NCBI GenBank assembly: GCA_009103225.1
Contig: RHPI01002438.1
Coordinates: 124,001 to 188,000, forward strand
From: Chlorokybus atmophyticus
Taxonomy: Eukaryota > Plantae > Mesostigma and Chlorokybus algae
DNA: 64,000 nt
Direction of reading: 5' to 3'
Shown here piece by piece: positions 26,334-42,070 of this stretch. Position 1 is the stretch's first letter. Each line of letters begins with the position of its first letter. The notes under the pieces are model-generated. The model was not told the origin of the DNA. It saw nothing but the letters and a program-made list of their open reading frames with translations, and ran no database searches. The position numbers and the translations under genes are program-made.

Positions 26334-29300
26334 ATGGCCGCGGCGGCGGCGGCGCCTGCGGCGATGGAGGTTGACGAGGTGGTAGCCGGTTCTGCGGCTG
26401 CGAAGGTTTTGGCGCCGCAGGCCACCGCCAACGGCCCAGCGCCGTCGTCGGCTGCCCCGCTGTCGCTGTTTGGTACACGCCTCCGCTTGGTCTGTTGTGC
26501 TGCATGTGCTTTACTTTGTCGTGCTGAGCGTGGAGGATCGAGCATTCCCATTGTTGTGAGTAGTAACGCCTCATGTCACATGCAGTGCTGCGAACCATAA
26601 AGTCAATGCAGTCACAGCATGGCCTTCGTCACGGTGACTACCTCCGTTACAGGTCAGCGATTGCAACCACGTGTTGCATTGAGAGCATATGATTTCTTGT
26701 GGCATTGCATCGTGTCCAGTCTCAACATGCATTACAGACAAGCAAGTTGAGTGGCTCACAAGCTGATGTTTCTGATCAGGCTATGCAAGTGGCCGTGCAG
26801 TACACTGTTAACAGCAGTGGTTTGCACATTTGCACGTGCAGATAAGACTCACTTGCTCTCATGCAGACAGTACTGCACACGAAAATTACGACGCTTGTAC
26901 AAGTCCTTGAAGTTCTTGCATGGCCGTGGAAAGTATCAAAAGAAGACCTTGAAGCCAGCCGACGTCACAGATGTCAGGTATTGCTCCGGTAGCAAGGTTA
27001 CAGTATTCAGTGCAATTCCACTTTTCAACGGCTTGTTATTGGTAGACCTTCATTGCATACATGTGTTTGTCTATGCAGGCACTTGCACATTCTGCTTATG
27101 AATGCCGAGCGAGGTTGGGCGTACGGGATGGAGTTGAAGCAGCTAGCAGGCGGTCCAACACCCCAGCAGCGGTGGCATTTGGTCAAGCGGTTTGCTAAAG
27201 GCGCGCGTTGGGCAGAGCAGCTAGCCACAATGTGCGCTGCCAAGGCGGATTCGCGCTCTGTGCTAGAAGCAGAGGTGTTGTAGTCATGTAGTGTGCCATG
27301 CAGTGCTACAAGGCTTGCATGCGACTGTCACGCAGTGTTGAGCGTTGCAAGTGACATGTAAGCTATGCAGGCGTATCACTCATGGATGCTCGGGAATGTG
27401 CTGCTGGAGCGAGAGAATGACCTGGAAAGTGCCTTATCCAAGTTTGTTCGCGCAAGGCAAGGCGCTGCTACTCTGCTGTGTGAAGTAATTGTGTTTGTTT
27501 GTCGTGACTTGATGCCTACTGCCTCAGGACTGTGTATGATCAGTTGAGCACAGTCGGGTCTGCTGAGGACAGCTCGCTTTTTCGGCAACGATCTGAAGAA
27601 CTCGCTCCCCTCATTAAGTACTGCGAGTATAAGCTGGGGCGTGCGGGCAAAGGTGGCGATCTCAGCCAGTTGCGCACAATCGGGGATGAAACCGACGACG
27701 CAGGGACGACCGATCTGCTGCAGTCAAAGTTAGAGGTCTGCTACTTGGTGCATCGTAAGGCATGAAAGGATGCTTGCTAGTTGATCATCGTGTTAAAATT
27801 GGCGTTGTGGTGCAGGAAGTTATGGGCCAGATGCGATCGCAACAAGCGGCTGCTATGGCTGACATTGAATGGCGAGGTCGCAAGTTGCCTGTGCGCAAAG
27901 ATCAGACCCGTGTGTGCGTGCTCAAAGGTATGGTATAGCATGTTGTTTCGTGAAGTCTGCCACTGCTGTTGTAGACTTGTTTCAGCACACCATATTCCAT
28001 ATACTACAGGTGAGGAGCTTGTAACAGAGGCGAGAAAGGCTACCACGCTTGAAAAGAAGATGTCACTGTATGATAAGGCATTCATAGCATTCAGTGATGC
28101 GCGCCGACACATTAATGATGACATGGTACGCTCCTTGTGACTGGCATAGTTGTGCACTACTACTGGTTTGATCAGTGCATGCTTGCAGACAGAGGCATCC
28201 AGTGCTGGAGCAAGTTCTGATGCACGCGCTGAGCTGCAAGCGCTGTCATCAGCAGTCGCCGGCATGCTGTTGGAAAGGACCATTGAGCGCAACCTGCTCC
28301 TGGTGCGTGTTGCTCGCAGCAAGCTGCAGAGACAGAATGTGCTGTTGACATCCGTGGGAGAGGAGAAACTGGAAGAGAGGTCCAAAGATGAAAGGTCACG
28401 GGATCGCGACAAGGACAAAGCAAAGCCTCAGGACTTAGTGCGGCTCTACGATATCCTGTTACAGGTATGCAAGGTTGCATTGTTGAGGTGCATGATTTTG
28501 AGATGGGTTGCGAAGCTTGATGCTAGCGGTAAAGCGTGGTTGTGGGAACATTGCAGAATATTGCGGACCTATCAGAGACAGCCCTTGGAGACACTGGTGC
28601 CAAAGCCTATGCGGAGGAGTGTGCAGCGCGCAAGGCTGCCTTTACTGCAGAAAGGTTTGCAACTGCCCATGTCTTTGCCAGAGGCGATTGTAGCACGCCA
28701 TTCACGGACAGGTGCAAACCCCCGCGCGCCTCGCCCTTACAGGTGCTTCTACATTGGCTTGTCATATGCAGTTGAGAACCAGTATGCAGAAGCAGTCGCG
28801 CTGTTCAGCCGTGCTGAGGAGCGAGCTCAGACTGCCATAGCCCTGTTAAAGCAACACCGATCCTCTGATCAAGTAAGTTGGCAAGCATTAATGCCACTCT
28901 GCCACGTGTGTTTCGCCATCCAGCTTCTATCTGACATGAGGTTTCCGTATGTTTGCAGCAAAGCATATCAGATGTGGAAGAGTTGCTTAACAGGTGTCGA
29001 GCGCATAGGGCGTTTTCACATGCGCAAGGCTGCGCACAGCTTGCACACTCCAAGGACACTGTGCACAAGGGTGTGTCACAGATGTCTCTCAAAGATAAGA
29101 GCGGTGCAGATGCGACTCAGGTAGCAACTGTGTGCCTTTCAACAGTCAAGCTCATGTCAGGACATTTTAAATGAGCTACTTACATGTCTAACTGCTGCAG
29201 GAGAAGCCGCGGTTGCTTGTGGACGCACTGCAGGAGTACATAGCGGCATCTGCGAACCCGCAGCAAGGCGAGCCTTTGATAGCACAGTTGCCTCCACCAT

Positions 29301-30065: not shown

Positions 30066-33000
30066 TTACCGGTTCTCTAACAACCGGTAGCTTCCTTTAT
30101 GTAGCCTCTTGTCTGTTACCCAAGGGACGTAGAAGGCACGAGACAGTGCAGGAGATTGCCAGCTCAATACGAAGGGTTCCTCCGCAATCGCATCCCAATG
30201 GCCGCTGGCCGGTGCCTCAGTGTGGTCCTCCCACTGCAGGTCAATGAAAAACCCGCATTCGTCTGCGTTGGACACCTGCAGAGCAACTCAAAGTCTCAGT
30301 AGCAGAAGTAGCCACAACACAGGGTTGTGGGAGTGAAGCTGCATGGAAATGGCAGCGACGGTGCAACACCTTGTGAGGATCCAAGCCATGCACTCATAGT
30401 GACACATGCACAATAGCAATATGTACCTTGCTGGCAGAGAAATTGTGCCATGCCATGCAATCTACAGTCACGAAGCTACGCGAAGCAGTACAGCAGCTTA
30501 CAAACTGGTGTGAATGTGCTTTATTCTGGTTGTTGAAGTAGCCAGGTGCTGCTCTGGTACCGCCGAGCGTGTCGTTGAATGGGAAAGGCAGCAGCCCATC
30601 AAACCCAGACGAGACGAATACCAAGCGATGGTGTGGGCTGGGCAGAAAGAATGATGAAGGGAACCGGTGCCACTCGCTGCCCACACACACCAGAGCTGCA
30701 AACACCACCATGTTGTCAGGCATTCATTATACAAGAGAAGACAGCAGGCCCTTTGGTACAGGATAGAACGCAAAAGCAACGACTGCAATGGCTTTACTCG
30801 CTCACTTTGATTTGTTGGGGCTGGAAAGTCTGCCAGATGACGGTAGACTGCCATTGGCGCGCCGTAGTTTAGAAGGATCGCGGCTGCTCGGGACGCGCTC
30901 AGCAGCGCGATGACACCGATGGCAGTGTACCGCGCAGATTGGTAGAGCTGCATATGCACACGCAATAAGAAGAACCAACTTTGCTAACGTTGCATGCAAG
31001 GGTCTCCAGTCACCACAAATGGTCATGAATTGCAGTGGAAATATTGCTGGTACAAGGACACTACCATGGATTCTGTCTGCAGTGCCTTTCGCCAGTACTG
31101 CAGCAGCCTTATGAGATAGATGATGGTTCCAGCAGCGGCCACACAAATGAGGGGATATACAACGTACATGAACCTGCGCAGTTGGACCGGTAAGGGTGTG
31201 GCTGAGCGCCGCGCATTGCTAAAACTTTAGCAGCTTGTGCTGTGTCGTACCGCTCTTCTTTGTGCGGGATTCTAGACATGAAGGTGAACCACACATAGAA
31301 GGGTGCTACGGTTGCCAAGACCTTGGGCATGTGCAGAGATGGATGATATCGTCTCACGTACACGTCTAGCTGCAAGACCATGGTGATGATGAGCGCATGC
31401 TTTCAGCTTTCGTTGGTACCAGATCACAACAACATGCCAATTGATGACCTTACCAGTGGAAACACAAGTGCAAGAGGAAGGGCCAGATTGAAATTGTTGA
31501 AGGCATTGCGCATGTAAAACAGCGAGCCCTCGACACCGTACAGGCTGGAGTCACCACCACCGGCTACATTGTATCTGCAAGAAAAGAAACCTGTACATCA
31601 GGATGCATGACTTGTGCGTGGCAGACGACAATCAGCGCAACTTCCGTATCATCATTACATCAAGACACGCCCTCCACGCGCACTCAACGGACGCTGCTGA
31701 ACACTTGCCAAGCCTCCTCACCTGAGCAGGTTGAACTGGGATACCAGCAAACGGCCATAGTAGTATGCATCTGCCAGTGCTGAAGGCACCTGCAATGTAG
31801 ACAAAACAACATCACAACATTGACAGACAACATGACTGCCAGTTGTTGCAAAGCCAGCGGAAGCTGACAGTCAGCGCAGCATTGCAAGCTGACACTGCGT
31901 ACAGCCACTTGTGGCTCACCATTATAGTGACAAAGGCCACCGCAGCAGTCAAGACTGCCTTGAGCACACTTTCTCCATAAACCAGCATGCACAGCCCTAT
32001 GGGTGCGGCAGCCAAGGCAGCAAACGGCCAGCCGATCAGCACGCCCGCTGCAGCTGCGAAAATGGCTGCCTTGGGCCGCCGTTGCAGCATGCATGCGGCC
32101 GCCAGCGTGATGCCATACATTGCGAATGTTGAGGGCAGAAAGGCTGAGAGGAATAATGATGTCAAGCAAACAGATGGTGTAGGCACACGCACAAGCATGC
32201 GCACACACGCACACATACTCGCACGCATGACGGTCCGCACACTTGTATGATCGCTTGCACATACACGCACACATGCGCGTGCGAGCGTTAGCACATGATC
32301 CATTGTCAAGCATACATTACCAGTACTGGCGAAGAGCATCCCTGCTGATGTGTACAGCAGCAGCAGCGTGGACTCGCCTAACTCGTTGTCTATCTTGGCA
32401 AGGGCGACGACCAAAGCAGACTCCACTGCAGCGGATGTGGCACCAAGCACAGCACGCAGCCAGTAGAAGGTCGCCACCTGCAGTTGCACTCACTTTTAGA
32501 TTTTGCAAACATGACTGCAGTCTGATCCACTACTGCATGTGCCAGCCGTTGCTACTGGCTAGGCAATCCTCACACAGCTGCCATGTCGGACCTTGTGACA
32601 ACCTTATGAATGCCGTCGCCATTCCACAGCTGCGCGGGAAATGCCAGTGCTTTGTGCGACAACAGGTACCCATACGAGCGAAGACCAAACTCTGCGCTGC
32701 AGACAGCTTATCAGTTAACAAGACGCCAACCCTTGTATGACTGCATAGTCCTTGCACACATGCACACACGCATACCTGTATTCCCATGTTTGGAGGCCGT
32801 AACCGTGCATCAGGTAATGCAGCGGTTCCCAGTAGTTGAACGTCTCGTCGCAATCATGTATGATGTTTGCAACCGCGCTAAAAAGGCGCACCGTCAAAAG
32901 CATGCCGAAGCAGCTTGACCATGTCAATGCATGCTCCTGAGCAGGTAAGGCAATGCGTTAAAGAAACACGAGGCATACACATTACCGGCGTGCGCACAGC

Positions 33001-33745: not shown

Positions 33746-33880
33746 TGTGTGCCATCCGTGCACACTCTGTGCAGTGTCAAAGGTCTGGTGCAGCGACGGT
33801 ACTGGCGCACACGCAGCCTCCCATGCTGCGCAGGCGGTAGGCGGCGGCGGCGGCGGCGGTGGTGGGGGCGGTGGGCGGCG

Positions 33881-36800
33881 ATGGCGCTCTTCGCCAGGGG
33901 GGCGGGCGCCTTACGACGCCAGGTGACGGCGTCTGCAGCTGCGAGCGTTGTCGGCGTCACCTCTTGCAGCCGCGGTATGGGCGTTGCTGGGTTGGGTGGT
34001 TGTTAGCTTAGCTTGTGCAAGCAGCAGTGTTTGTTGGCTGAGTGTGCGCTGCTCAGAGGAGGAGTGTTAGTCTGTTGCTTGGTTGCTGTCGGATGTTGTA
34101 CTGTTGCTTGCCAGTGAGCTTCTGTCTTGCAACTGCAACGTGCATCATTAGGCGCCTGGTTCTTTGTTGCTTGTCAAAGCCTAGTTGTGTTGTGCCTTCT
34201 TGTTTCAACAAAAATATAACCGGCAGCACAGGTGTTAGCGTCGTACTGCTGATGGTGTGCATTGACTTGACACGGTGTGTCAATTCAATCTGTACCACTC
34301 TGCATACCTACTAGCGAAGCTTGTTGAGAAAATGCTCGGACAACTTTGTGCATGCACGTGCGTGTGCACCAGCGCGCAAGTGGGGTCACCTTTGTGTGTG
34401 TACTTGCGTGTTGTTAGAATACCGTTCAACCCGGAAGCGATGCTTGTGCTCAGGGAGAAGGGGCAGGGTGGAGATGCGTGCTTGAATTCGTTGCTGATTG
34501 TTGATGTTGGAAGCTTGCTCTGGGGTAGCTGCGCAGCAGCGTAGCACATGCCCGCAGAGGCCATAAAGACTATCCTGATTGACTTTGAACATTGCCATGT
34601 TCGCACAGACTCCTGTGCGCTACCCCCGTATGTGCGATTTGCTGCCTCCTCCAGCACGGCCACAGCGGATGTCCACATCGGTGCGCACACCCACAGCGGG
34701 CCGCCATCACTGAAGCCGATGAGTGAGATACCGGGGCCGCGTGGGCTGCCATTCGGTCTTGGCATCACGCTCCGAGCCGTCAAGCACCTCGGCAACCTCA
34801 CTGAGCTGCACAAAGAGCTGCGCAAGGAGTATGGCGATATTGTACAGTACACGGTGAGTGCATTGTAACGTGTGTGCACACGCGCAGGACTGTACGCACG
34901 AGCTTCTTGTTGGTGGTTTTGTTGTTTACTGGATGTAAGTATGCTCTTCATCAGCTGTTGCCTCAAACGGCTGTTCCTTGATCTAGTACATGAGGTACAC
35001 TGTCGTACGGTGTTCTTAAGCAAGGCTCTCTCTCATGCCTGCAGCTTACAGTGTCTGGTCATAGTTGGCAGGCTTGCACACCGTACATGTGTTTGACACA
35101 GCGTCTATTGAAGCTGTCTTTCGCAACGAAGGGCGGAATCCACAGAGACCGCTCATTGATTTCTGGAAAGACTACAGGTGTGGCCCTGGTCCCTTGACAT
35201 ACATGTGCTGCTGGTGAGTGGCGAGACAGGTGTGGTATGTCGCCGGATGACATGGGTGTTGCACAGAGTGCAGCGGGATCTAGCCTTAGGCATGGTGTTG
35301 GCGGATGGAGATGAATGGCGTCGCATGCGAATCCCCACGCAAAAGCAGCTTATGGATCAGGCAGGCACTCTCTGTTGCGTCATGACCATATGAACAGTTT
35401 GGTGTTGAAGCCTGTTATTGCTTTCTTGCTGCCTACTGCAAGCACTGTGTGCTAGCGTCACTTGGGTGAGACAGGTACACATGGCTTTCATTGGCAGGCA
35501 GTTATAGCTTCATGGGTGGCACCGGTTTCTGAGGTGGCATCCGAGTTTGCGAACTACATCCGGCGTGAGGTTGATGCCAATGGGGTACTCGTGGACATGC
35601 AGAAACGGGTACGTGCCCTGTCATTGTGCTCATCTTGCGCATGCGTGTTATCCACATATAAAGTGCGTGATGGGTTTGCAACTTGTATGTGTTACTCAGG
35701 TTGCTCTCTACACCATGGAGACGATTGTGCGCCTTGTGCTGGGCCGCACGATGCACGCGCTTGGCCCGGCCACTCCAGCGCCTGAAGTGGGCGAGTTCAT
35801 CGCTGCTGCGCGGAATATGTTCGCCTACACAGAGAAAGTGATGTTTGGTCTGCCGCTTCACAAGCTCTACAAGACAGCCAATTATAAGGTACTGCTTCCT
35901 TGTCAACTGCGTAAAATCCATTATTCATTTAAACACCATTGCCTTGCCAGCGTGTTGCGCTGATTAAATCCGTGCTTGCTAAAAACGTTTATGCTGCTTA
36001 CCATCGTGAGATAGGGGTTGGAGAAGGCTTGGGATGACATGTTTCGCATTGCCGGCACCATGGTGCGCGAGCGCATTGCTCGCTTTGAGCGCGAGGGTGG
36101 TGCCGTTGTGGACGACCTGTTGAGCAGCCTGCTGGCCTCAGGCTCGGATCTCACTGTCAAAGAACATGTTGTCAACGGGTATGCTGTTGTTGCTCTCTGC
36201 AGATGCTCGAATTGCTCACGAATGCGTTATGCTCTATGTAAATGACGCAAGATTACGCATGAGGTTGAATTATTGTATTGGTCACAGTGTGGACATGGTG
36301 TCTGGTGGTGTCGACACCACATCAGTCTCCATCACATGGTGCCTATACCATCTTGCAAAGAACCCCGACGTTCAACAGGTGTGCTTGAGAATTGAGGGTC
36401 CACATAATTTGACTACATCAATCTGTTCAGCTGGACTTTTGGCAATGCGACACATGCAGGACACCTGTGTTACCATGAGGCACATGTGCAAGCCTATCAC
36501 ACTGGGTTTGATGCCACTCAAGTTGTGGTTGTGTGCGTTCGTGACTTGCAGCAAGTGTACAATGAGGTGGCCTCGGTGCTGGGCGATCGGGAGGTGGTGA
36601 CAGCAGCGGACCTGCAGCACCTGCCGCTAGTAAAGGCCGCTGTCAAGGAGACCATGCGGCTGACCCCTGTTGTGCCACAGCACGGTCGGATACTAGTGTC
36701 CGACATTGAGTTGAATGGCTACCTCATACCCAAGGCAAACACAGCGTGGAAGTTCTGCTCGCAGCGGGTCTGGCTTAGCCAGAAAATACTGTCAGGTTAA

Positions 36801-37340
36801 CTTACTAAACCAACATCAACCGTGCAGGGGACCTCTATCACCATCGACGCTTATCATGTTGGCCATGACCCCAACTTGTTTAAAGACCCAGACAGGTATG
36901 CTGGGTGTAGGAATGGAAGTGTCTGGTCTTGCCGCTGTGCGTGCCAGTTTGTTTGTGGCACGCATACACGCATATGCACGCACACATTTGTTTGTGCGAC
37001 ACAGGTTTTACCCCCAACGCTTTCTCGGCAAAGACAAGCAGCATTCGCCATTCGCTACCATACCGTTCGGGCACGGCGCTCGCCGCTGCATTGGGTCGTA
37101 CCTGGCGTTGATGGAGACGCATGTGGCCGTCGCGTGCTTGTTGCAAAAGTAAGTGCTACAGTGTGGACCAGCTTTCCAGGTTTTGTAAGTACACCAGTCG
37201 CTGTGTGCGTTTAGCTGAACACAACCATGTTACCATGCAGGTTTGAGTTGCTTCACCACGGGCCGCCTGTGGGCACGCGTACTGCGCTCACTATCTTGCC
37301 AGACAGGTCTGTTGATCTTGAGTTCCGTGCCAGAACGTAG
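33881..37340 (+). CDS. Cytochrome P450, mitochondrial-clan-like, with predicted mitochondrial presequence
   Basis: N-terminus MALFARGAGALRRQVTASAAAS; KPMSEIPGPRGLP; VHVFDTASIEAVFRNEGRNPQRP; GDEWRRMR; I-helix SGGVDTTS; LPLVKAAVKETMRLTP; GYLIPKGT; FYPQRF; heme motif PFGHGARRCIG. Stop at 37338-37340. Confidence 0.93.
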
Positions 37341-37501
37341 CCTTCTTACACTAGGTAGCTCATTGATTCCTTCATTGGTTTGCATACCGTGTCCACACAG
37401 TCAATCAGGGTTTGCGGTTGCTACTTATAGCACGTTGAGTATGAAGACTTATCACCAGTTGTGCTATTGGTAGTGTACAGAATATGCACGTAATGTATGC
37501 A

Positions 37502-37564
37502 ACATGCACGACACATGCAGACACTTGCACGACATGCACGACACATGCAGACACATGCAGACAC
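37502..37564 (+). repeat. 10-11-bp minisatellite (ACATGCA[C]GAC) x6
   Basis: acatgcacgac acatgcagac acttgcacgac atgcacgac acatgcagac acatgcagac. Confidence 0.9.
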
Positions 37565-38067
37565 AACCACAACCACACTCACCTCTATCACGACCACCGG
37601 GCTAGGTGCACACTACCTACTACTTACTTACACTACTCTACTGCCCAACCCTGTCAGTCTGCAAGCATGCATTACCTGCCACATCGCTAGTGTGTGGAGG
37701 TGTAGCATTCATTGGGGTCAATCTAACAAGAGGTAAACAATTGCTGGCACAGTGTTCTCCAGTCCATTGTGTATCACGTGCTGCAATCGCTTGCAGCAAG
37801 CGGTGAGCTTGAGAGTGCGTCGATGCCACAAAAGTTGTTGGTCCACAGTCTGACCACCATAGTATACAGGATAAGCGCGACAATGTTGTAGGCATGCAAT
37901 TTAACGCCATGCATCACCTGCAATTGTTGTCACGCACCTCCATGCTGCACACATGCAACCATGTATGCTAGCGCTAGATCACAGCCCCTCGGTCCTGCGG
38001 CTGTTCTCTGTGATGCACCTATTCGCAATGGCATGCATGCCGCTGGCAACTTGTTAACTATAGTTAG

Positions 38068-40484: not shown

Positions 40485-40747
40485 CGCTGATAGACGATAT
40501 CGCGCTTATTGGGATAACAATCAATTGTGGTCGATATCGCGACCACTGGCGTGGCCTTGGGCGAATCGTCACTGGAAAACAAGCGCAACGCACGCTCTGG
40601 GTGCCTGCATTTTTCTGCAGCCGGGCAGCCGCGTAGGTGCAATCGGATAATGGCCGCAAGTTAGTGAATGCAAAATTAGGGTTGTGTGAAGGCAAATTAG
40701 GGTGTAAGCCGCCGCCGTCGCCGCCGCCCACGTGGACGACGAGCAGG

Positions 40748-42070
40748 ATGGCGCAGGCGATGGCGGTGGCACCGGCTGCTGCCTCGGTGTCATCACAGCA
40801 GCCAGTGGCCGCGCCGAAGTCTTTCCAGGGTTTCCGGGCCGCGCCTCAGGGAGTTTCGCTCAGGGCATCGTTCGCGCCATCTTCATCCAGGGCGGCGGCG
40901 CTGAATGGCAGGCGAACCGCCGTTTGCATGTCGCTGGAGGCTGGGATCGGCGTGTTTGGTAACAAGGCTGGAATGACCCAGATCTTCACGGAGGCTGGTC
41001 TTGCAGTTCCCGTTACCGTCATTGCCCTTGGCGAGGGCAATGTTGTTACCCAGGTCCGTGTCGGTGTGCGTCAAATCCACAATCACTACGCTCAAACATG
41101 AACTCACATCGCTGTTTCGTGGGCAATGTGCAAGCAGTACGCCAAATTGTGGGCCCTAGAACACGCACAGCAATGCATCGCACTGATGGTTTCTGGCAAG
41201 ATTGCCCCAATTCAAGTCAGGTTTTTATTTGTCTGTTTGTCTTTGTTGACGGAGCGTCTGCTGGTAGTGATCAATGGTATTATGGTGAATTTGGCATCGT
41301 AAATGTTTGCAAGGCATTGGCAAACGAGCAGTGCTGTTGCAGGTGAAGACGCCCGAGACGGACGGATACAGCGCGGTGCAGGTTGGCTACAAGGAAGTGG
41401 CTGAGCGCAAGCTGACAAGGCCTGAGATCGGGCATCTGAAGAAGAGCGAGTCTCCTCCGCTGCGCTATCTCGCTGAATGGCGGCTCAAGGCTGTCGACAG
41501 CTTTACCCTGGGTCAGCAGCTCAAGGCAGAGGAGCTGTTCAAGGCTGGTGATCTTGTGGATGTTTCAGGCACATCTATTGGAAAGGGCTTCCAAGGTGCG
41601 TTGTTTCAAGTTGTATGTTTCAGTTCAAGTCAAATTGTATGCAGGCCAATTTGAGTAGTTTGGGGCGTTCACTAACCAGGAATAATGCCATCGTGTAGGT
41701 GCCATCAAGCGACACAACTTCCATAGAGGTCCCATGTCTCACGGGTCAAAGTCCCATCGTGAGCTGGGTTCCACTGGTCCCGGTACCACACCCGGTCGTG
41801 TTTACCCGGGCAAGAAGGAGGCAGGCCAAATGGGCAACGAGCAGGTGCGTCAGTTGTTGATTGTTTCAAGTCTAGTGCATGCAGTCGTTTATTTTACATG
41901 GAGCATCTGGTCTAACTATGGTCCGCTTATCACAGGTCAAGGTCCGCAAGCTTGAGGTCATCCGTGTGGACTCAGAGAACAGGTGCATTTTGGTTAAGGG
42001 TGCTGTGCCCGGTAAGCCAGGAAACCTTCTCAGGATATCTCCAGCCAAGATCGTTGGCAAGAATATCTAG
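40748..42070 (+). CDS. RPL3: Plastid 50S ribosomal protein L3 with transit peptide
   Basis: Ala/Ser/Arg-rich transit peptide, then [75 protein letters not shown]. Stop at 42068-42070. Confidence 0.96.

What the first reader, a model, noticed from the sequence alone, without database searches (positions are those of the whole stretch)
33881..37340. Mitochondrial-clan-like cytochrome P450 in a green-plant genome
Seen in sequence: an intact multi-exon P450 with no N-terminal transmembrane anchor. It instead has an Arg/Ala/Ser-rich presequence almost free of acidic residues (MALFARGAGALRRQVTASAAAS...RFAASSS). It carries motifs typical of mitochondrial-clan CYPs: KPMSEIPGPRGLP, VHVFD..IEAVFRNEG..P.RP, GDEWRRMR, GGVDTTS and PLVKAAVKETMRL. 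Established knowledge: the mitochondrial clan (CYP11/24/27, CYP12/49/302/314/315) is classically considered metazoan, and the two lysines of the PLLKASIKETLR-type K-helix segment contact adrenodoxin. Plants have mitochondrial ferredoxin and ferredoxin reductase, but their P450s are known as ER or plastid enzymes. Inference: this alga may run a class I ferredoxin-driven mitochondrial P450 system, from ancient retention or horizontal transfer. Caveat: the basic pair usual after the heme Cys (CIGRR) is CIGSY here.
Basis: partly seen in the sequence, partly recalled or inferred. Interest (0 to 1): 0.8.

Follow-up and report, generated by a model that had tools for sequence, protein, structure and literature searches.

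The report
Mitochondrial-clan-type P450 in Chlorokybus alga
An early-branching relative of land plants (the alga Chlorokybus) expresses an intact haem enzyme whose closest named relatives are the animal "mitochondrial" P450s that make steroid hormones, bile acids and vitamin D, a group that one 2017 paper says has not been found in plants.

Summary
Window 33881-37340 (+) is an intact 12-exon gene for a 531-aa cytochrome P450. All 11 splice junctions appear, without mismatch, in transcript contigs from two independent studies. Two introns are GC-AG. The public Chlorokybus atmophyticus model (Chrsp104S01282, 473 aa) is wrong next to both of them.

The clan reading also holds. Against all solved structures, every mitochondrial-clan P450 (CYP24A1, CYP11A1, CYP11B1/2) outranks every other P450, with end-to-end alignments. 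In a mixture-model ML tree the protein and its Mesostigma sister sit in a 100/100 clade with animal CYP27/24/10/314/49/44. An amoebozoan, a second protist and an oomycete sequence are in the same clade. CYP2, CYP4, CYP26, CYP97, fern, fungal and prokaryotic P450s lie outside, and forced grouping with CYP97 is rejected. Animal sequences can still form one clade, so the alga is better read as a sister lineage than as nested inside animals.

The N-terminus has no membrane anchor and looks like a basic presequence. Mitochondrial import and ferredoxin supply are inferred, not shown. The Arg after the haem Cys, present in 26 of 28 clade members, is Tyr here. Retention and eukaryote-to-eukaryote transfer cannot be separated. 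I found no paper describing this.

The parts
33881..37340 (+). Complete P450 gene, start codon to stop codon: 12 exons, 531 aa
   Evidence: Spliced by hand. All 11 junctions are confirmed by transcript contigs from two studies with 0 mismatches.
33881..33974 (+). Exon 1: start codon and first 31 codons of the presequence (MALFARGAGALRRQVTASAAASVVGVTSCSR)
   Evidence: First in-frame ATG. The X1 contig joins exon 1 to exon 2 over 93 letters. 3 Arg and 0 acidic residues in the first 30 aa; hydrophobic moment peaks at residues 3-13.
34609..34853 (+). Exon 2: rest of the presequence (to aa 66, window 34712), then the mature N-terminal motif KPMSEIPGPRGLP
   Evidence: The K-x-x-x-E-IPGP motif aligns with the start of the conserved core in animal mito-clan proteins.
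35065..35177 (+). Exon 3 (LAGLHTVHVFD...WKDY), missing from the public gene model
35267..35360 (+). Exon 4, with the W168xxxR172 motif (GDEWRRMR), replaced by out-of-frame residues in the public model
35361..35497 (+). Intron 4, GC-AG type
   Evidence: The junction skips 137 nt, and the stated 7-nt ambiguity allows 35360|35498. The GT alternative would skip 131 nt and is excluded.
35498..35608 (+). Exon 5
35700..35888 (+). Exon 6
36015..36178 (+). Exon 7
36288..36378 (+). Exon 8: I-helix G343-G-V-D-T-T-S349 (window 36304-36324) with the oxygen-activating acid-Thr pair
   Evidence: Pfam PF00067, E 1.6e-9. V345 and D346 are clade signatures.
36552..36734 (+). Exon 9: K-helix LPLVK395AAVK399E400TMR403 (K395 = 36633-36635, K399 = 36645-36647)
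   Evidence: Pfam, E 4.8e-17. At the K395 column, 26 of 28 clade members have Lys/Arg and the residues tabulated outside are non-basic. The last 13 aa of this exon are missing from the public model.
36735..36827 (+). Intron 9, GC-AG type
   Evidence: The junction skips 93 nt, consistent with 36734|36828.
36828..36895 (+). Exon 10
37005..37148 (+). Exon 11: PERF-type motif (PQRF) and haem loop FGHGARRC479IGS482Y483 (Cys codon 37087-37089)
   Evidence: Pfam, E 1.1e-12. Best PDB match to this exon alone is CYP24A1 at 36.8 bits, against 25.4 for the next. At Cys+4, 26 of 28 clade members have Arg; this protein has Tyr.
37241..37340 (+). Exon 12 and stop codon TAG
   Evidence: Transcript contigs run on into the 3' UTR to at least 37500.

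Best explanation
This is a genuine, expressed nuclear gene of Chlorokybus atmophyticus. It encodes a catalytically complete P450 monooxygenase. The protein belongs to the same deep lineage as the animal mitochondrial clan (CYP11/24/27 and CYP10/44/49/314) and is best read as a non-animal sister branch, shared with Mesostigma.

What is shown: the gene structure and its expression; the clan affinity; the absence of an ER signal-anchor; and the presence of all catalytic motifs (haem Cys479, ExxR, PERF-type motif, I-helix Asp-Thr).

What is inferred:
- The roughly 45-66-residue basic leader is a cleavable presequence that takes the protein into an organelle, most likely the mitochondrial matrix side of the inner membrane.
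- There the protein is reduced, as a class I system, by NADPH through the mitochondrial ferredoxin reductase and [2Fe-2S] ferredoxin.
- The ferredoxin docks on the proximal face that carries the clade-specific K395/K399 pair.
- The enzyme hydroxylates a lipophilic substrate. By analogy with almost all characterised clan members this would be a sterol or other isoprenoid.

My sub-probabilities: real active P450, 0.9. Specific relative of the mito clan, 0.85. Organelle-targeted rather than ER, 0.85. Mitochondrion rather than plastid, 0.6. Sterol-type substrate, 0.3.
For: Gene and expression. The 12-exon model is confirmed by transcript contigs from two studies. The public model jgi/Chlat1 Chrsp104S01282 matches the same sequence apart from its modelling errors, which also identifies the organism.

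Clan affinity:
- Whole-protein phmmer against PDB puts all four solved mito-clan families first. For the Chlorokybus model the scores are 149, 131 and 95-97 bits, against 86 for the next best. For the Mesostigma orthologue they are 215, 177 and 131-135 bits, against 110. Only the mito-clan matches align end to end.
- The best full-length relatives among hits of an exhaustive HMMER search are Mesostigma (308 bits), Luapelamoeba (279), an unnamed protist (267), and then animal CYP27A1, CYP27C1 and CYP24-like proteins.
- An IQ-TREE LG+C20 PMSF tree of 59 rows gives a 28-row clade with 100/100 support and a stem length of 0.55. It holds every animal mito-clan row plus the alga. Chlorokybus and Mesostigma are sisters at 100/93.
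- An AU test rejects grouping with CYP97 (p 4e-52).
- Language-model neighbours of the Mesostigma orthologue are CYP11A1 and CYP27A1 clusters, at 0.99.
- Clade-signature residues K395, V345 and D346 are present.

Targeting. There is no hydrophobic anchor, and the leader resembles those of the animal mito-clan rows.

Plausibility of the redox chain. Plant mitochondria have the ferredoxin and reductase pair (MFDX, MFDR), according to PMC5688476.
Against: - Cys+3 and Cys+4 are Ser-Tyr. At Cys+4, Arg is found in 26 of 28 clade members, including Mesostigma. By my recollection this Arg contributes to adrenodoxin docking in CYP11A1, so docking may be altered.
- Composition alone does not separate a mitochondrial presequence from a plastid transit peptide. 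Ala/Ser/Thr make up a large share of the leader, and the plastid-type CYP97 rows also lack an anchor.
- No targeting predictor, localisation data or partner protein was examined.
- The tree has no rows for clans 3, 7, 19, 46, 51, 710, 711, 746 or 747. Only the PDB ranking covers CYP3A, CYP19, CYP46 and CYP51.
- None of the 8 conserved animal intron positions is shared exactly.
- There is no substrate evidence at all.
Confidence: 0.6

Rival explanations
1. Same protein and same clan, but the leader is a chloroplast transit peptide. The enzyme would work in the plastid on plastid ferredoxin, as the CYP97 carotenoid hydroxylases are thought to.
For: The leader is rich in Ala, Ser and Thr (14 Ala and 15 Ser/Thr in 66 residues). 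The plastid-type CYP97 rows also lack an anchor. By my recollection, green-algal transit peptides can resemble mitochondrial presequences.
Against: Three Arg lie within the first 13 residues, with an amphipathic peak at residues 3-13. A leader in the same window, on a bacterial-type ribosomal protein L3 gene (40.6-41.1 kb; whether that protein is plastid or mitochondrial is not established), has no charged residue in its first 20 residues. That is a single comparator. All characterised relatives are mitochondrial.
Confidence: 0.2
2. Origin by horizontal transfer. The common ancestor of Mesostigma and Chlorokybus acquired the gene from another eukaryote, for example an amoebozoan-like protist. 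It did not inherit it from the first eukaryotes.
For: The distribution outside animals is very patchy. The exhaustive search, which used exon 9 only, brought in full-length non-animal relatives only from Mesostigma, Luapelamoeba, one unnamed compact protist genome, Thraustotheca and one metagenome contig. The streptophyte pair groups with the amoebozoan pair at 91/92. PMC5688476 states that the clan has not been found in plants.
Against: The gene carries 11 introns and has the window's typical G+C content of about 52%. It has a sister gene in Mesostigma at only 36% identity, so any transfer would be very old. The order of branches inside the clade is unresolved. Animal monophyly with all non-animal rows outside is not rejected (p 0.63), which also fits vertical descent with losses. 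Only the top 150 hits of a search with one exon were inspected, so the apparent patchiness may partly be a sampling effect.
Confidence: 0.4
3. Not really a mito-clan relative. The grouping would be an artefact of long branches, convergence or missing clans, and the protein would belong to an algal clan such as 711, 746 or 747, or to clan 3.
For: Those clans are not in my tree. The tree's candidates came partly from a search seeded with exon 9, which favours K-helix look-alikes. Exon 9 alone scores isoflavone synthase as high as CYP24A1.
Against: The PDB search is independent of that seed. It ranks CYP24A1, CYP11A1 and CYP11B above CYP3A4, CYP19, CYP46, CYP51, CYP17, CYP1, CYP2, CYP4B1, CYP97, CYP73 and CYP93, for both the alga and its Mesostigma sister, and only the mito-clan alignments are full-length. 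A site-heterogeneous model gives 100/100 support on a long stem. The signature columns agree.
Confidence: 0.07
4. Contaminant DNA from an animal or amoeba was assembled into the algal genome.
For: The nearest named relatives are animal and amoebozoan proteins.
Against: The gene lies between ordinary housekeeping genes on one 64-kb stretch: SRP68, an ALG9-like mannosyltransferase and a bacterial-type ribosomal protein L3. Base composition is even across the window. The transcript is present in runs from two separate studies labelled with the same organism. It is in the JGI Chlat1 annotation. Identity to any animal or amoeba protein is 36% or less.
Confidence: 0.02

Closest known systems
Vertebrate CYP24A1, CYP27A1/CYP27C1 and CYP11A1 (mitochondrial clan, class I P450s reduced by adrenodoxin)
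   Same: These are the best whole-length sequence matches and they align end to end. They share the mature N-terminal K..(P/S)..E-IPGP motif, the I-helix V-D-T-T, the K-helix basic pair (LPLVKAAVKE against, for example, MPLLKAVLKE) and the haem loop. They also have an anchor-less basic leader of similar length.
   Different: Identity is low; the closest relative of any kind, Mesostigma, is only 36% identical. The Arg pair after the haem Cys (GRR) is Ser-Tyr. None of the 8 conserved animal intron positions is shared exactly. The alga probably branches outside the animal clade. Substrate and location are unknown.
Mesostigma viride Mv07449 (JGI Mesvir1 27764), uncharacterised
   Same: Sister in the tree at 100/93. 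Similar length (530 aa) and a similar anchor-less leader of 53 residues. The same motifs are present.
   Different: Only 36% identical. It keeps Arg at Cys+4 (CVGFRLAEMET). I-helix Gly and Thr positions are altered (AAVDATS).
Amoebozoan and oomycete relatives: Luapelamoeba hula transcript, an unnamed protist contig in ERR14790941, and Thraustotheca clavata OQR98394.1
   Same: They are members of the same 100/100 clade. The amoebozoan pair groups with the streptophyte pair at 91/92. The unnamed contig carries eukaryotic neighbours, strumpellin and condensin Cnd2.
   Different: The Luapelamoeba and unnamed-protist rows have Thr in place of the second K-helix Lys. The Thraustotheca record is a fused gene model with two P450 domains plus LRR and Myb parts. 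None has been characterised.
Arabidopsis ADXR-ADX-P450 chain (CYP711A1, CYP90A1, CYP75B1; PMC8794853)
   Same: It is a reported case of P450s working with mitochondrial adrenodoxin in the green lineage.
   Different: Those enzymes belong to ordinary plant clans (711, 85, 71) and are otherwise regarded as ER enzymes. The Chlorokybus protein is of the mito-clan lineage itself.
Plastid CYP97 carotenoid hydroxylases
   Same: They are organelle-targeted P450s of green plants without an ER anchor.
   Different: They are phylogenetically distant. Forced grouping is rejected, with a log-likelihood difference of 123 and p 4e-52. Their I-helix is of the AGHETT type.

Membership tests
Cytochrome P450 superfamily (PF00067) | Pfam match plus haem-thiolate Cys loop, ExxR, PERF-type motif and I-helix acid-Thr | tested here: met
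   PF00067 matches exons 8, 9 and 11 above the curated cut-off. C479, E400/R403, P454-Q-R-F457 and D346-T347 are all present and aligned.
Mitochondrial clan of P450s (CYP11/24/27; CYP10/12/44/49/302/314/315) | Forms a clade with named members to the exclusion of other clans | tested here: met
   The 28-row clade has UFBoot/SH-aLRT support of 100/100. It holds CYP27A1, CYP27C1, CYP24-like, CYP10, CYP314A1 and CYP49A/44 rows. CYP2, CYP4, CYP26, CYP97, fern, fungal, bacterial and archaeal rows lie outside. The CYP97 alternative is rejected. Limits: clans 3, 7, 19, 46, 51, 711, 746 and 747 are not in the tree, and the alga may be sister to, not inside, the animal group.
Mitochondrial clan of P450s | Best whole-length similarity is to clan members rather than to any other P450 | tested here: met
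   PDB ranking, local phmmer of the true 531-aa protein and ESM Atlas neighbours of the Mesostigma orthologue.
Mitochondrial clan of P450s | No N-terminal signal-anchor; a basic, acid-poor leader in its place | tested here: met
   Maximum hydropathy over 17 residues is 1.06, against 2.4-3.0 in the microsomal rows. There are 5 basic and 2 acidic residues in 66.
Mitochondrial clan of P450s | Import into mitochondria and cleavage of the presequence | not testable with these tools
   No targeting predictor or localisation data was available. A possible R-2 type site at R41-F42|A43 is only my reading of the sequence.
Mitochondrial clan of P450s | K-helix basic pair used for adrenodoxin docking (LLKAxxKE) | tested here: met
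   K395 and K399 are present. At the first position 26 of 28 clade rows have Lys/Arg and the residues tabulated outside are non-basic. At the second position 26 of 28 clade rows have Lys/Arg, against 13 of 31 outside with Lys. The docking role is from my recollection of the CYP11A1-adrenodoxin structure.
Mitochondrial clan of P450s | Basic residues right after the haem Cys (C-x-G-R-R) | tested here: not met
   The sequence is C479-I-G-S482-Y483. At Cys+4, Arg is found in 26 of 28 clade rows, and Chlorokybus is one of the two exceptions. At Cys+3, Arg/Lys is found in 23 of 28.
Mitochondrial clan of P450s | I-helix signature G-V-D-T-T, where other clans mostly have G-H-E-T-T | tested here: met
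   V345 column: Val in 23 of 28 clade rows, against 1 of 31 outside. D346 column: Asp in 24 of 28, against 8 of 31.
Mitochondrial clan of P450s | Electrons from NADPH through ferredoxin reductase and a [2Fe-2S] ferredoxin (class I) | not testable with these tools
   This needs biochemical reconstitution. The partner genes lie outside this window and were not examined.
Mitochondrial clan of P450s | Gene structure shared with animal members (supporting feature, not defining) | tested here: not met
   The crinoid and fish genes share all 8 intron positions and the snail gene shares 7 of them. None of the 8 coincides exactly with any of the 11 Chlorokybus introns. One animal intron lies one codon from a Chlorokybus intron, in the same phase.

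The most novel reading that the evidence does not exclude
The ferredoxin-dependent 'mitochondrial' P450 lineage is older than animals. On this reading it was present in an early eukaryote and has survived in only a few lineages: animals, some Amoebozoa, some oomycetes, and the Mesostigma-Chlorokybus branch at the base of the streptophytes. The accepted account, in which an animal microsomal P450 was re-addressed to mitochondria after the split from fungi and plants, would then be wrong. The deepest streptophyte branch would also have had a mitochondrial P450 system of this type that other plants lost.
Probability: 0.35. Interest if true: 0.8.

Novelty: new member of a known kind. Interest (0 to 1): 0.68.

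Why it matters
The mitochondrial clan underlies steroid hormone, bile acid, vitamin D and ecdysone chemistry in animals. Its origin is usually placed inside the animal lineage, a view attributed to Omura and Gotoh 2017 in PMC10499268. PMC5688476 states that the clan has not been found in plants.

A well-supported, expressed relative in Chlorokybus and Mesostigma, together with amoebozoan and oomycete relatives, makes that origin story directly testable. Either the lineage predates animals, or it moved between distant eukaryotes.

It also offers a natural green-lineage enzyme with which to ask whether plant-type mitochondrial ferredoxin and reductase can drive a P450. And it points to possible unexplored sterol or isoprenoid oxidation in the earliest streptophyte branch.

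On the practical side, the public gene model is wrong by 58 residues. Anyone building CYP trees from the annotation would therefore be using a damaged sequence.

Tried and rejected
1. Alternative splicing of intron 4 with a GT donor (model B). Rejected, because the transcript junction skips 137 nt, not 131.

2. Single-exon searches. Pfam is silent on the N-terminal exons. PDB with exon 2 finds nothing. PDB with exon 9 ties isoflavone synthase with CYP24A1. These are too short to decide a clan.

3. Word-index protein searches with the public model, with an alignment of the non-animal relatives, and with the Luapelamoeba protein. All three were swamped by generic P450s ('only the 8000 candidates sharing most words were scored'). 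They missed even Mesostigma, so their blanks say nothing about absence. They were useful only as a source of outgroup sequences.

No relatives were found, but this method sees only close relatives.

5. Shared intron positions as evidence of common descent with the animal genes. None is shared exactly, which is uninformative at this evolutionary depth.

6. A look-up of the Mesostigma gene's DNA to compare introns. It is not on record. The taxon of P0044 and P0195 could not be found either.

7. Looking for a functional gene cluster. The neighbours are SRP68, an ALG9-like transferase and ribosomal protein L3, and there is no paralogue in the window.

8. The true 531-aa protein has no single reference, so it could not be given to the remote search or folding tools. 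I used the public model P0001, the Mesostigma orthologue and local phmmer/IQ-TREE in its place. No structure was predicted.

9. TargetP and MitoFates are not available here.

10. Sequences of clans 3, 51, 711, 746 and 747 could not be fetched for the tree.
Full report
**What is there**

Reading the three forward frames across 33881-37340 and joining them at GT/GC-AG boundaries gives a 12-exon coding sequence of 1596 nt, or 531 aa. Two junctions were ambiguous from sequence alone, because the only in-frame donors next to conserved protein segments are GC, not GT.

Laying public transcript contigs on the locus settled this. One contig in each of two runs from two different studies (2021 and 2013) covers the gene with no mismatch and shows all eleven junctions. 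The 137-nt and 93-nt skips fit only the GC-AG introns 35361-35497 and 36735-36827. The gene is therefore real, intact and transcribed.

The ATG at 33881 is the first in-frame ATG, and the longer contig joins exon 1 to exon 2.

**Organism and annotation**

An exhaustive HMMER search seeded with exon 9 returned a 473-aa protein named jgi/Chlat1/694/Chrsp104S01282. This is the JGI model for this gene in Chlorokybus atmophyticus, which agrees with an earlier scan note.

Aligned with my model, it is identical except at two places. It lacks exon 3 and replaces exon 4 with out-of-frame residues. It also drops the last 13 residues of exon 9. Both errors sit beside the GC-AG introns, so the public protein is 58 residues short and partly wrong.

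**Which P450 it is**

Single exons are not decisive. Exon 9 scores isoflavone synthase and CYP24A1 equally, although the haem exon already prefers CYP24A1 (36.8 against 25.4 bits).

Whole proteins are decisive. Against every chain in the PDB, the public Chlorokybus model scores:
- CYP24A1: 149 bits
- CYP11A1: 125-131 bits
- CYP11B1/2: 95-97 bits
- best non-mitochondrial P450: 86 bits

The intact Mesostigma orthologue gives 215, 159-177 and 131-135 bits, against 110 for the best non-mitochondrial P450 (CYP97A). Only the mitochondrial-clan matches run from the IPGP motif to the C-terminus.

A local phmmer of the true 531-aa protein against everything fetched ranks as follows:
- Mesostigma viride Mv07449: 308 bits, 36% identity
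- a Luapelamoeba hula (Amoebozoa) transcript: 279 bits
- a protein on an 11-kb compact eukaryotic contig with strumpellin and condensin neighbours: 267 bits
- one P450 domain of a fused Thraustotheca clavata (oomycete) model: 203 bits
- then animal CYP27A1, CYP27C1-like, CYP24-like, CYP10, CYP314A1 and CYP49A/44 proteins

Language-model neighbours of the Mesostigma protein are CYP11A1 and CYP27A1 clusters.

**Tree**

I built a 59-row alignment of these sequences. Outgroups came from the word searches and from the same exhaustive search: CYP2, CYP4, CYP26, three CYP97-type plastid P450s, two fern, one rice and three fungal P450s, a BM3-like domain, and about a dozen bacterial and archaeal P450s. 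I analysed it with IQ-TREE under LG+C20+F+G4 (PMSF).

- A clade of 28 rows has 100/100 support on a stem of 0.55 substitutions per site. It holds every animal mitochondrial-clan row, Chlorokybus with Mesostigma (100/93), Luapelamoeba with the unnamed protist (100/99), Thraustotheca, and two sequences of unknown origin.
- The streptophyte and amoebozoan pairs join at 91/92.
- The order of the main branches inside the clade is unresolved.
- Forcing Chlorokybus and Mesostigma together with CYP97 costs 123 log-likelihood units (AU p 4e-52).
- Forcing the animal rows into one clade, with all non-animal rows outside, is not rejected and is in fact 4.5 units better (p 0.63).

The alga therefore need not be nested among animal genes. 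It is best described as a non-animal sister branch of the classical clan.

Limits: clans 3, 7, 19, 46, 51, 710, 711, 746 and 747 are not in the tree. For CYP3A, CYP19, CYP46 and CYP51 I rely on the PDB ranking.

**Signature residues**

In the same alignment:
- The first K-helix lysine (K395) is Lys/Arg in 26 of 28 clade rows, and the residues tabulated outside are non-basic.
- The I-helix Val-Asp before the conserved Thr is Val in 23 of 28 rows (1 of 31 outside) and Asp in 24 of 28 (8 of 31 outside).
- Chlorokybus has all three of these.
- The exception is the position four residues after the haem cysteine. It is Arg in 26 of 28 clade rows, including Mesostigma, but Tyr483 in Chlorokybus, with Ser482 where most rows have Arg/Lys.
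- All catalytic residues are intact: C479, E400/R403, W168/R172 and D346-T347.

**N-terminus**

Microsomal rows have a 17-residue hydropathy maximum of 2.4-3.0 before the proline-rich motif. Chlorokybus has 1.06 and Mesostigma 0.64, and the animal mitochondrial-clan rows are mostly below 1.

The Chlorokybus leader is 66 residues long, with 5 basic and 2 acidic residues. Three arginines fall in the first 13 residues, and there is an amphipathic peak there.

This rules out a normal ER anchor and fits a presequence. Plastid CYP97 rows also lack an anchor, though, and I could run no targeting predictor. A leader seen in the same window, on a bacterial-type ribosomal protein L3 gene whose organelle is not established, has no charge in its first 20 residues. 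That leans towards mitochondria for the P450, but it is a single comparison.

**Origin**

The crinoid and fish genes share all eight intron positions, and the snail gene shares seven of them. None of the eight coincides exactly with any of the eleven Chlorokybus introns. One lies a single codon away in the same phase.

The gene has the window's ordinary composition, many introns, and a 36%-identical sister in Mesostigma. It has therefore been in this lineage for a very long time.

Whether it came down from an early eukaryote with many losses, or arrived by an old transfer between eukaryotes, cannot be decided here. The link to Amoebozoa would fit a transfer. Pattern scans of prokaryotic genomes and of metagenomes found nothing, but they see only close relatives. 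Prokaryotic P450s in the tree lie outside the clade.

**Literature**

- PMC5688476 states that the mito CYP clan has not been found in plants, and that plants do have mitochondrial ferredoxin and its reductase.
- PMC10499268 summarises the usual view that mitochondrial P450s arose in animals from a microsomal ancestor, and itself reports a mitochondrial P450 in Toxoplasma.
- PMC8794853 reports adrenodoxin-interacting, mitochondrion-located P450s in Arabidopsis, but these belong to plant clans 711, 85 and 71.
- Searches combining Chlorokybus, Mesostigma, green algae, clan and P450 found no description of a mito-clan P450 in streptophyte algae. The library lacks most subscription journals, so this is not proof of novelty.

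**Verdict**

The clan assignment is well supported as a sister lineage of the animal clan. Mitochondrial location and ferredoxin dependence are the most likely mechanism but remain inferred, and one docking-related residue is not conserved.

The finding is a new and taxonomically unexpected member of a known enzyme kind. It would interest specialists in P450 evolution and in plant and algal sterol metabolism.

Noticed in passing
window 35065-35360 and 36696-36734: The public JGI model Chrsp104S01282 (473 aa) omits exon 3, replaces exon 4 with out-of-frame residues, and drops the last 13 aa of exon 9. Both errors lie beside GC-AG introns. The gene caller apparently does not allow GC donors, so other Chlorokybus models may have the same fault.
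   Followed up: yes
window 35361-35497 and 36735-36827: Two of the 11 introns in one gene are GC-AG, both confirmed by transcripts. This is a high share if typical of the genome.
   Followed up: partly
window 33823-33880: The 5' leader holds a (GGC)n run directly before the start codon. It also has a 5-codon upstream ORF (ATG CTG CGC AGG CGG TAG) at 33823-33840 in another frame. The reads tool skipped 33830-33880 as a repeat.
   Followed up: no
window 37497-37580: There is an imperfect tandem of CACGACA/CATGCAGACA-type units inside the 3' UTR. Transcript contigs extend at least to 37500.
   Followed up: no
window 27532-29124 (+), 31812-32489 (-), 40637-41654 (+): The neighbouring genes are SRP68, an ALG9-like GT22 mannosyltransferase, and a bacterial-type ribosomal protein L3 with an Ala/Ser-rich, charge-poor leader. 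The L3 Pfam match is weak (E 0.0021, below the curated cut-off). None has a functional link to the P450.
   Followed up: partly
L005:1001-9954 (Thraustotheca clavata JNBS01001857.1): The oomycete relative OQR98394.1 is a 2157-aa model that strings together two P450 domains with LRR and Myb parts. This is probably several genes fused by the annotation. It implies tandem P450s of this clade in an oomycete.
   Followed up: partly
L001:2626-4047 (Logan ERR14790941 contig): An apparently intronless 473-aa member of the same clade lies in a compact eukaryotic genome, next to strumpellin and condensin Cnd2 genes. The organism is unidentified. It is sister to the Luapelamoeba sequence.
   Followed up: partly
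If that is right, Chlorokybus would carry more than one 'animal-type' P450 clan, which would favour ancient retention over a single transfer. I did not check it.
   Followed up: no
alignment, query aa 428|429 (window 36734|36828): Chlorokybus intron 9 (phase 0, after IPK) lies exactly one codon upstream of a phase-0 intron conserved in the crinoid, fish and snail mito-clan genes. This could be chance or intron sliding.
   Followed up: partly
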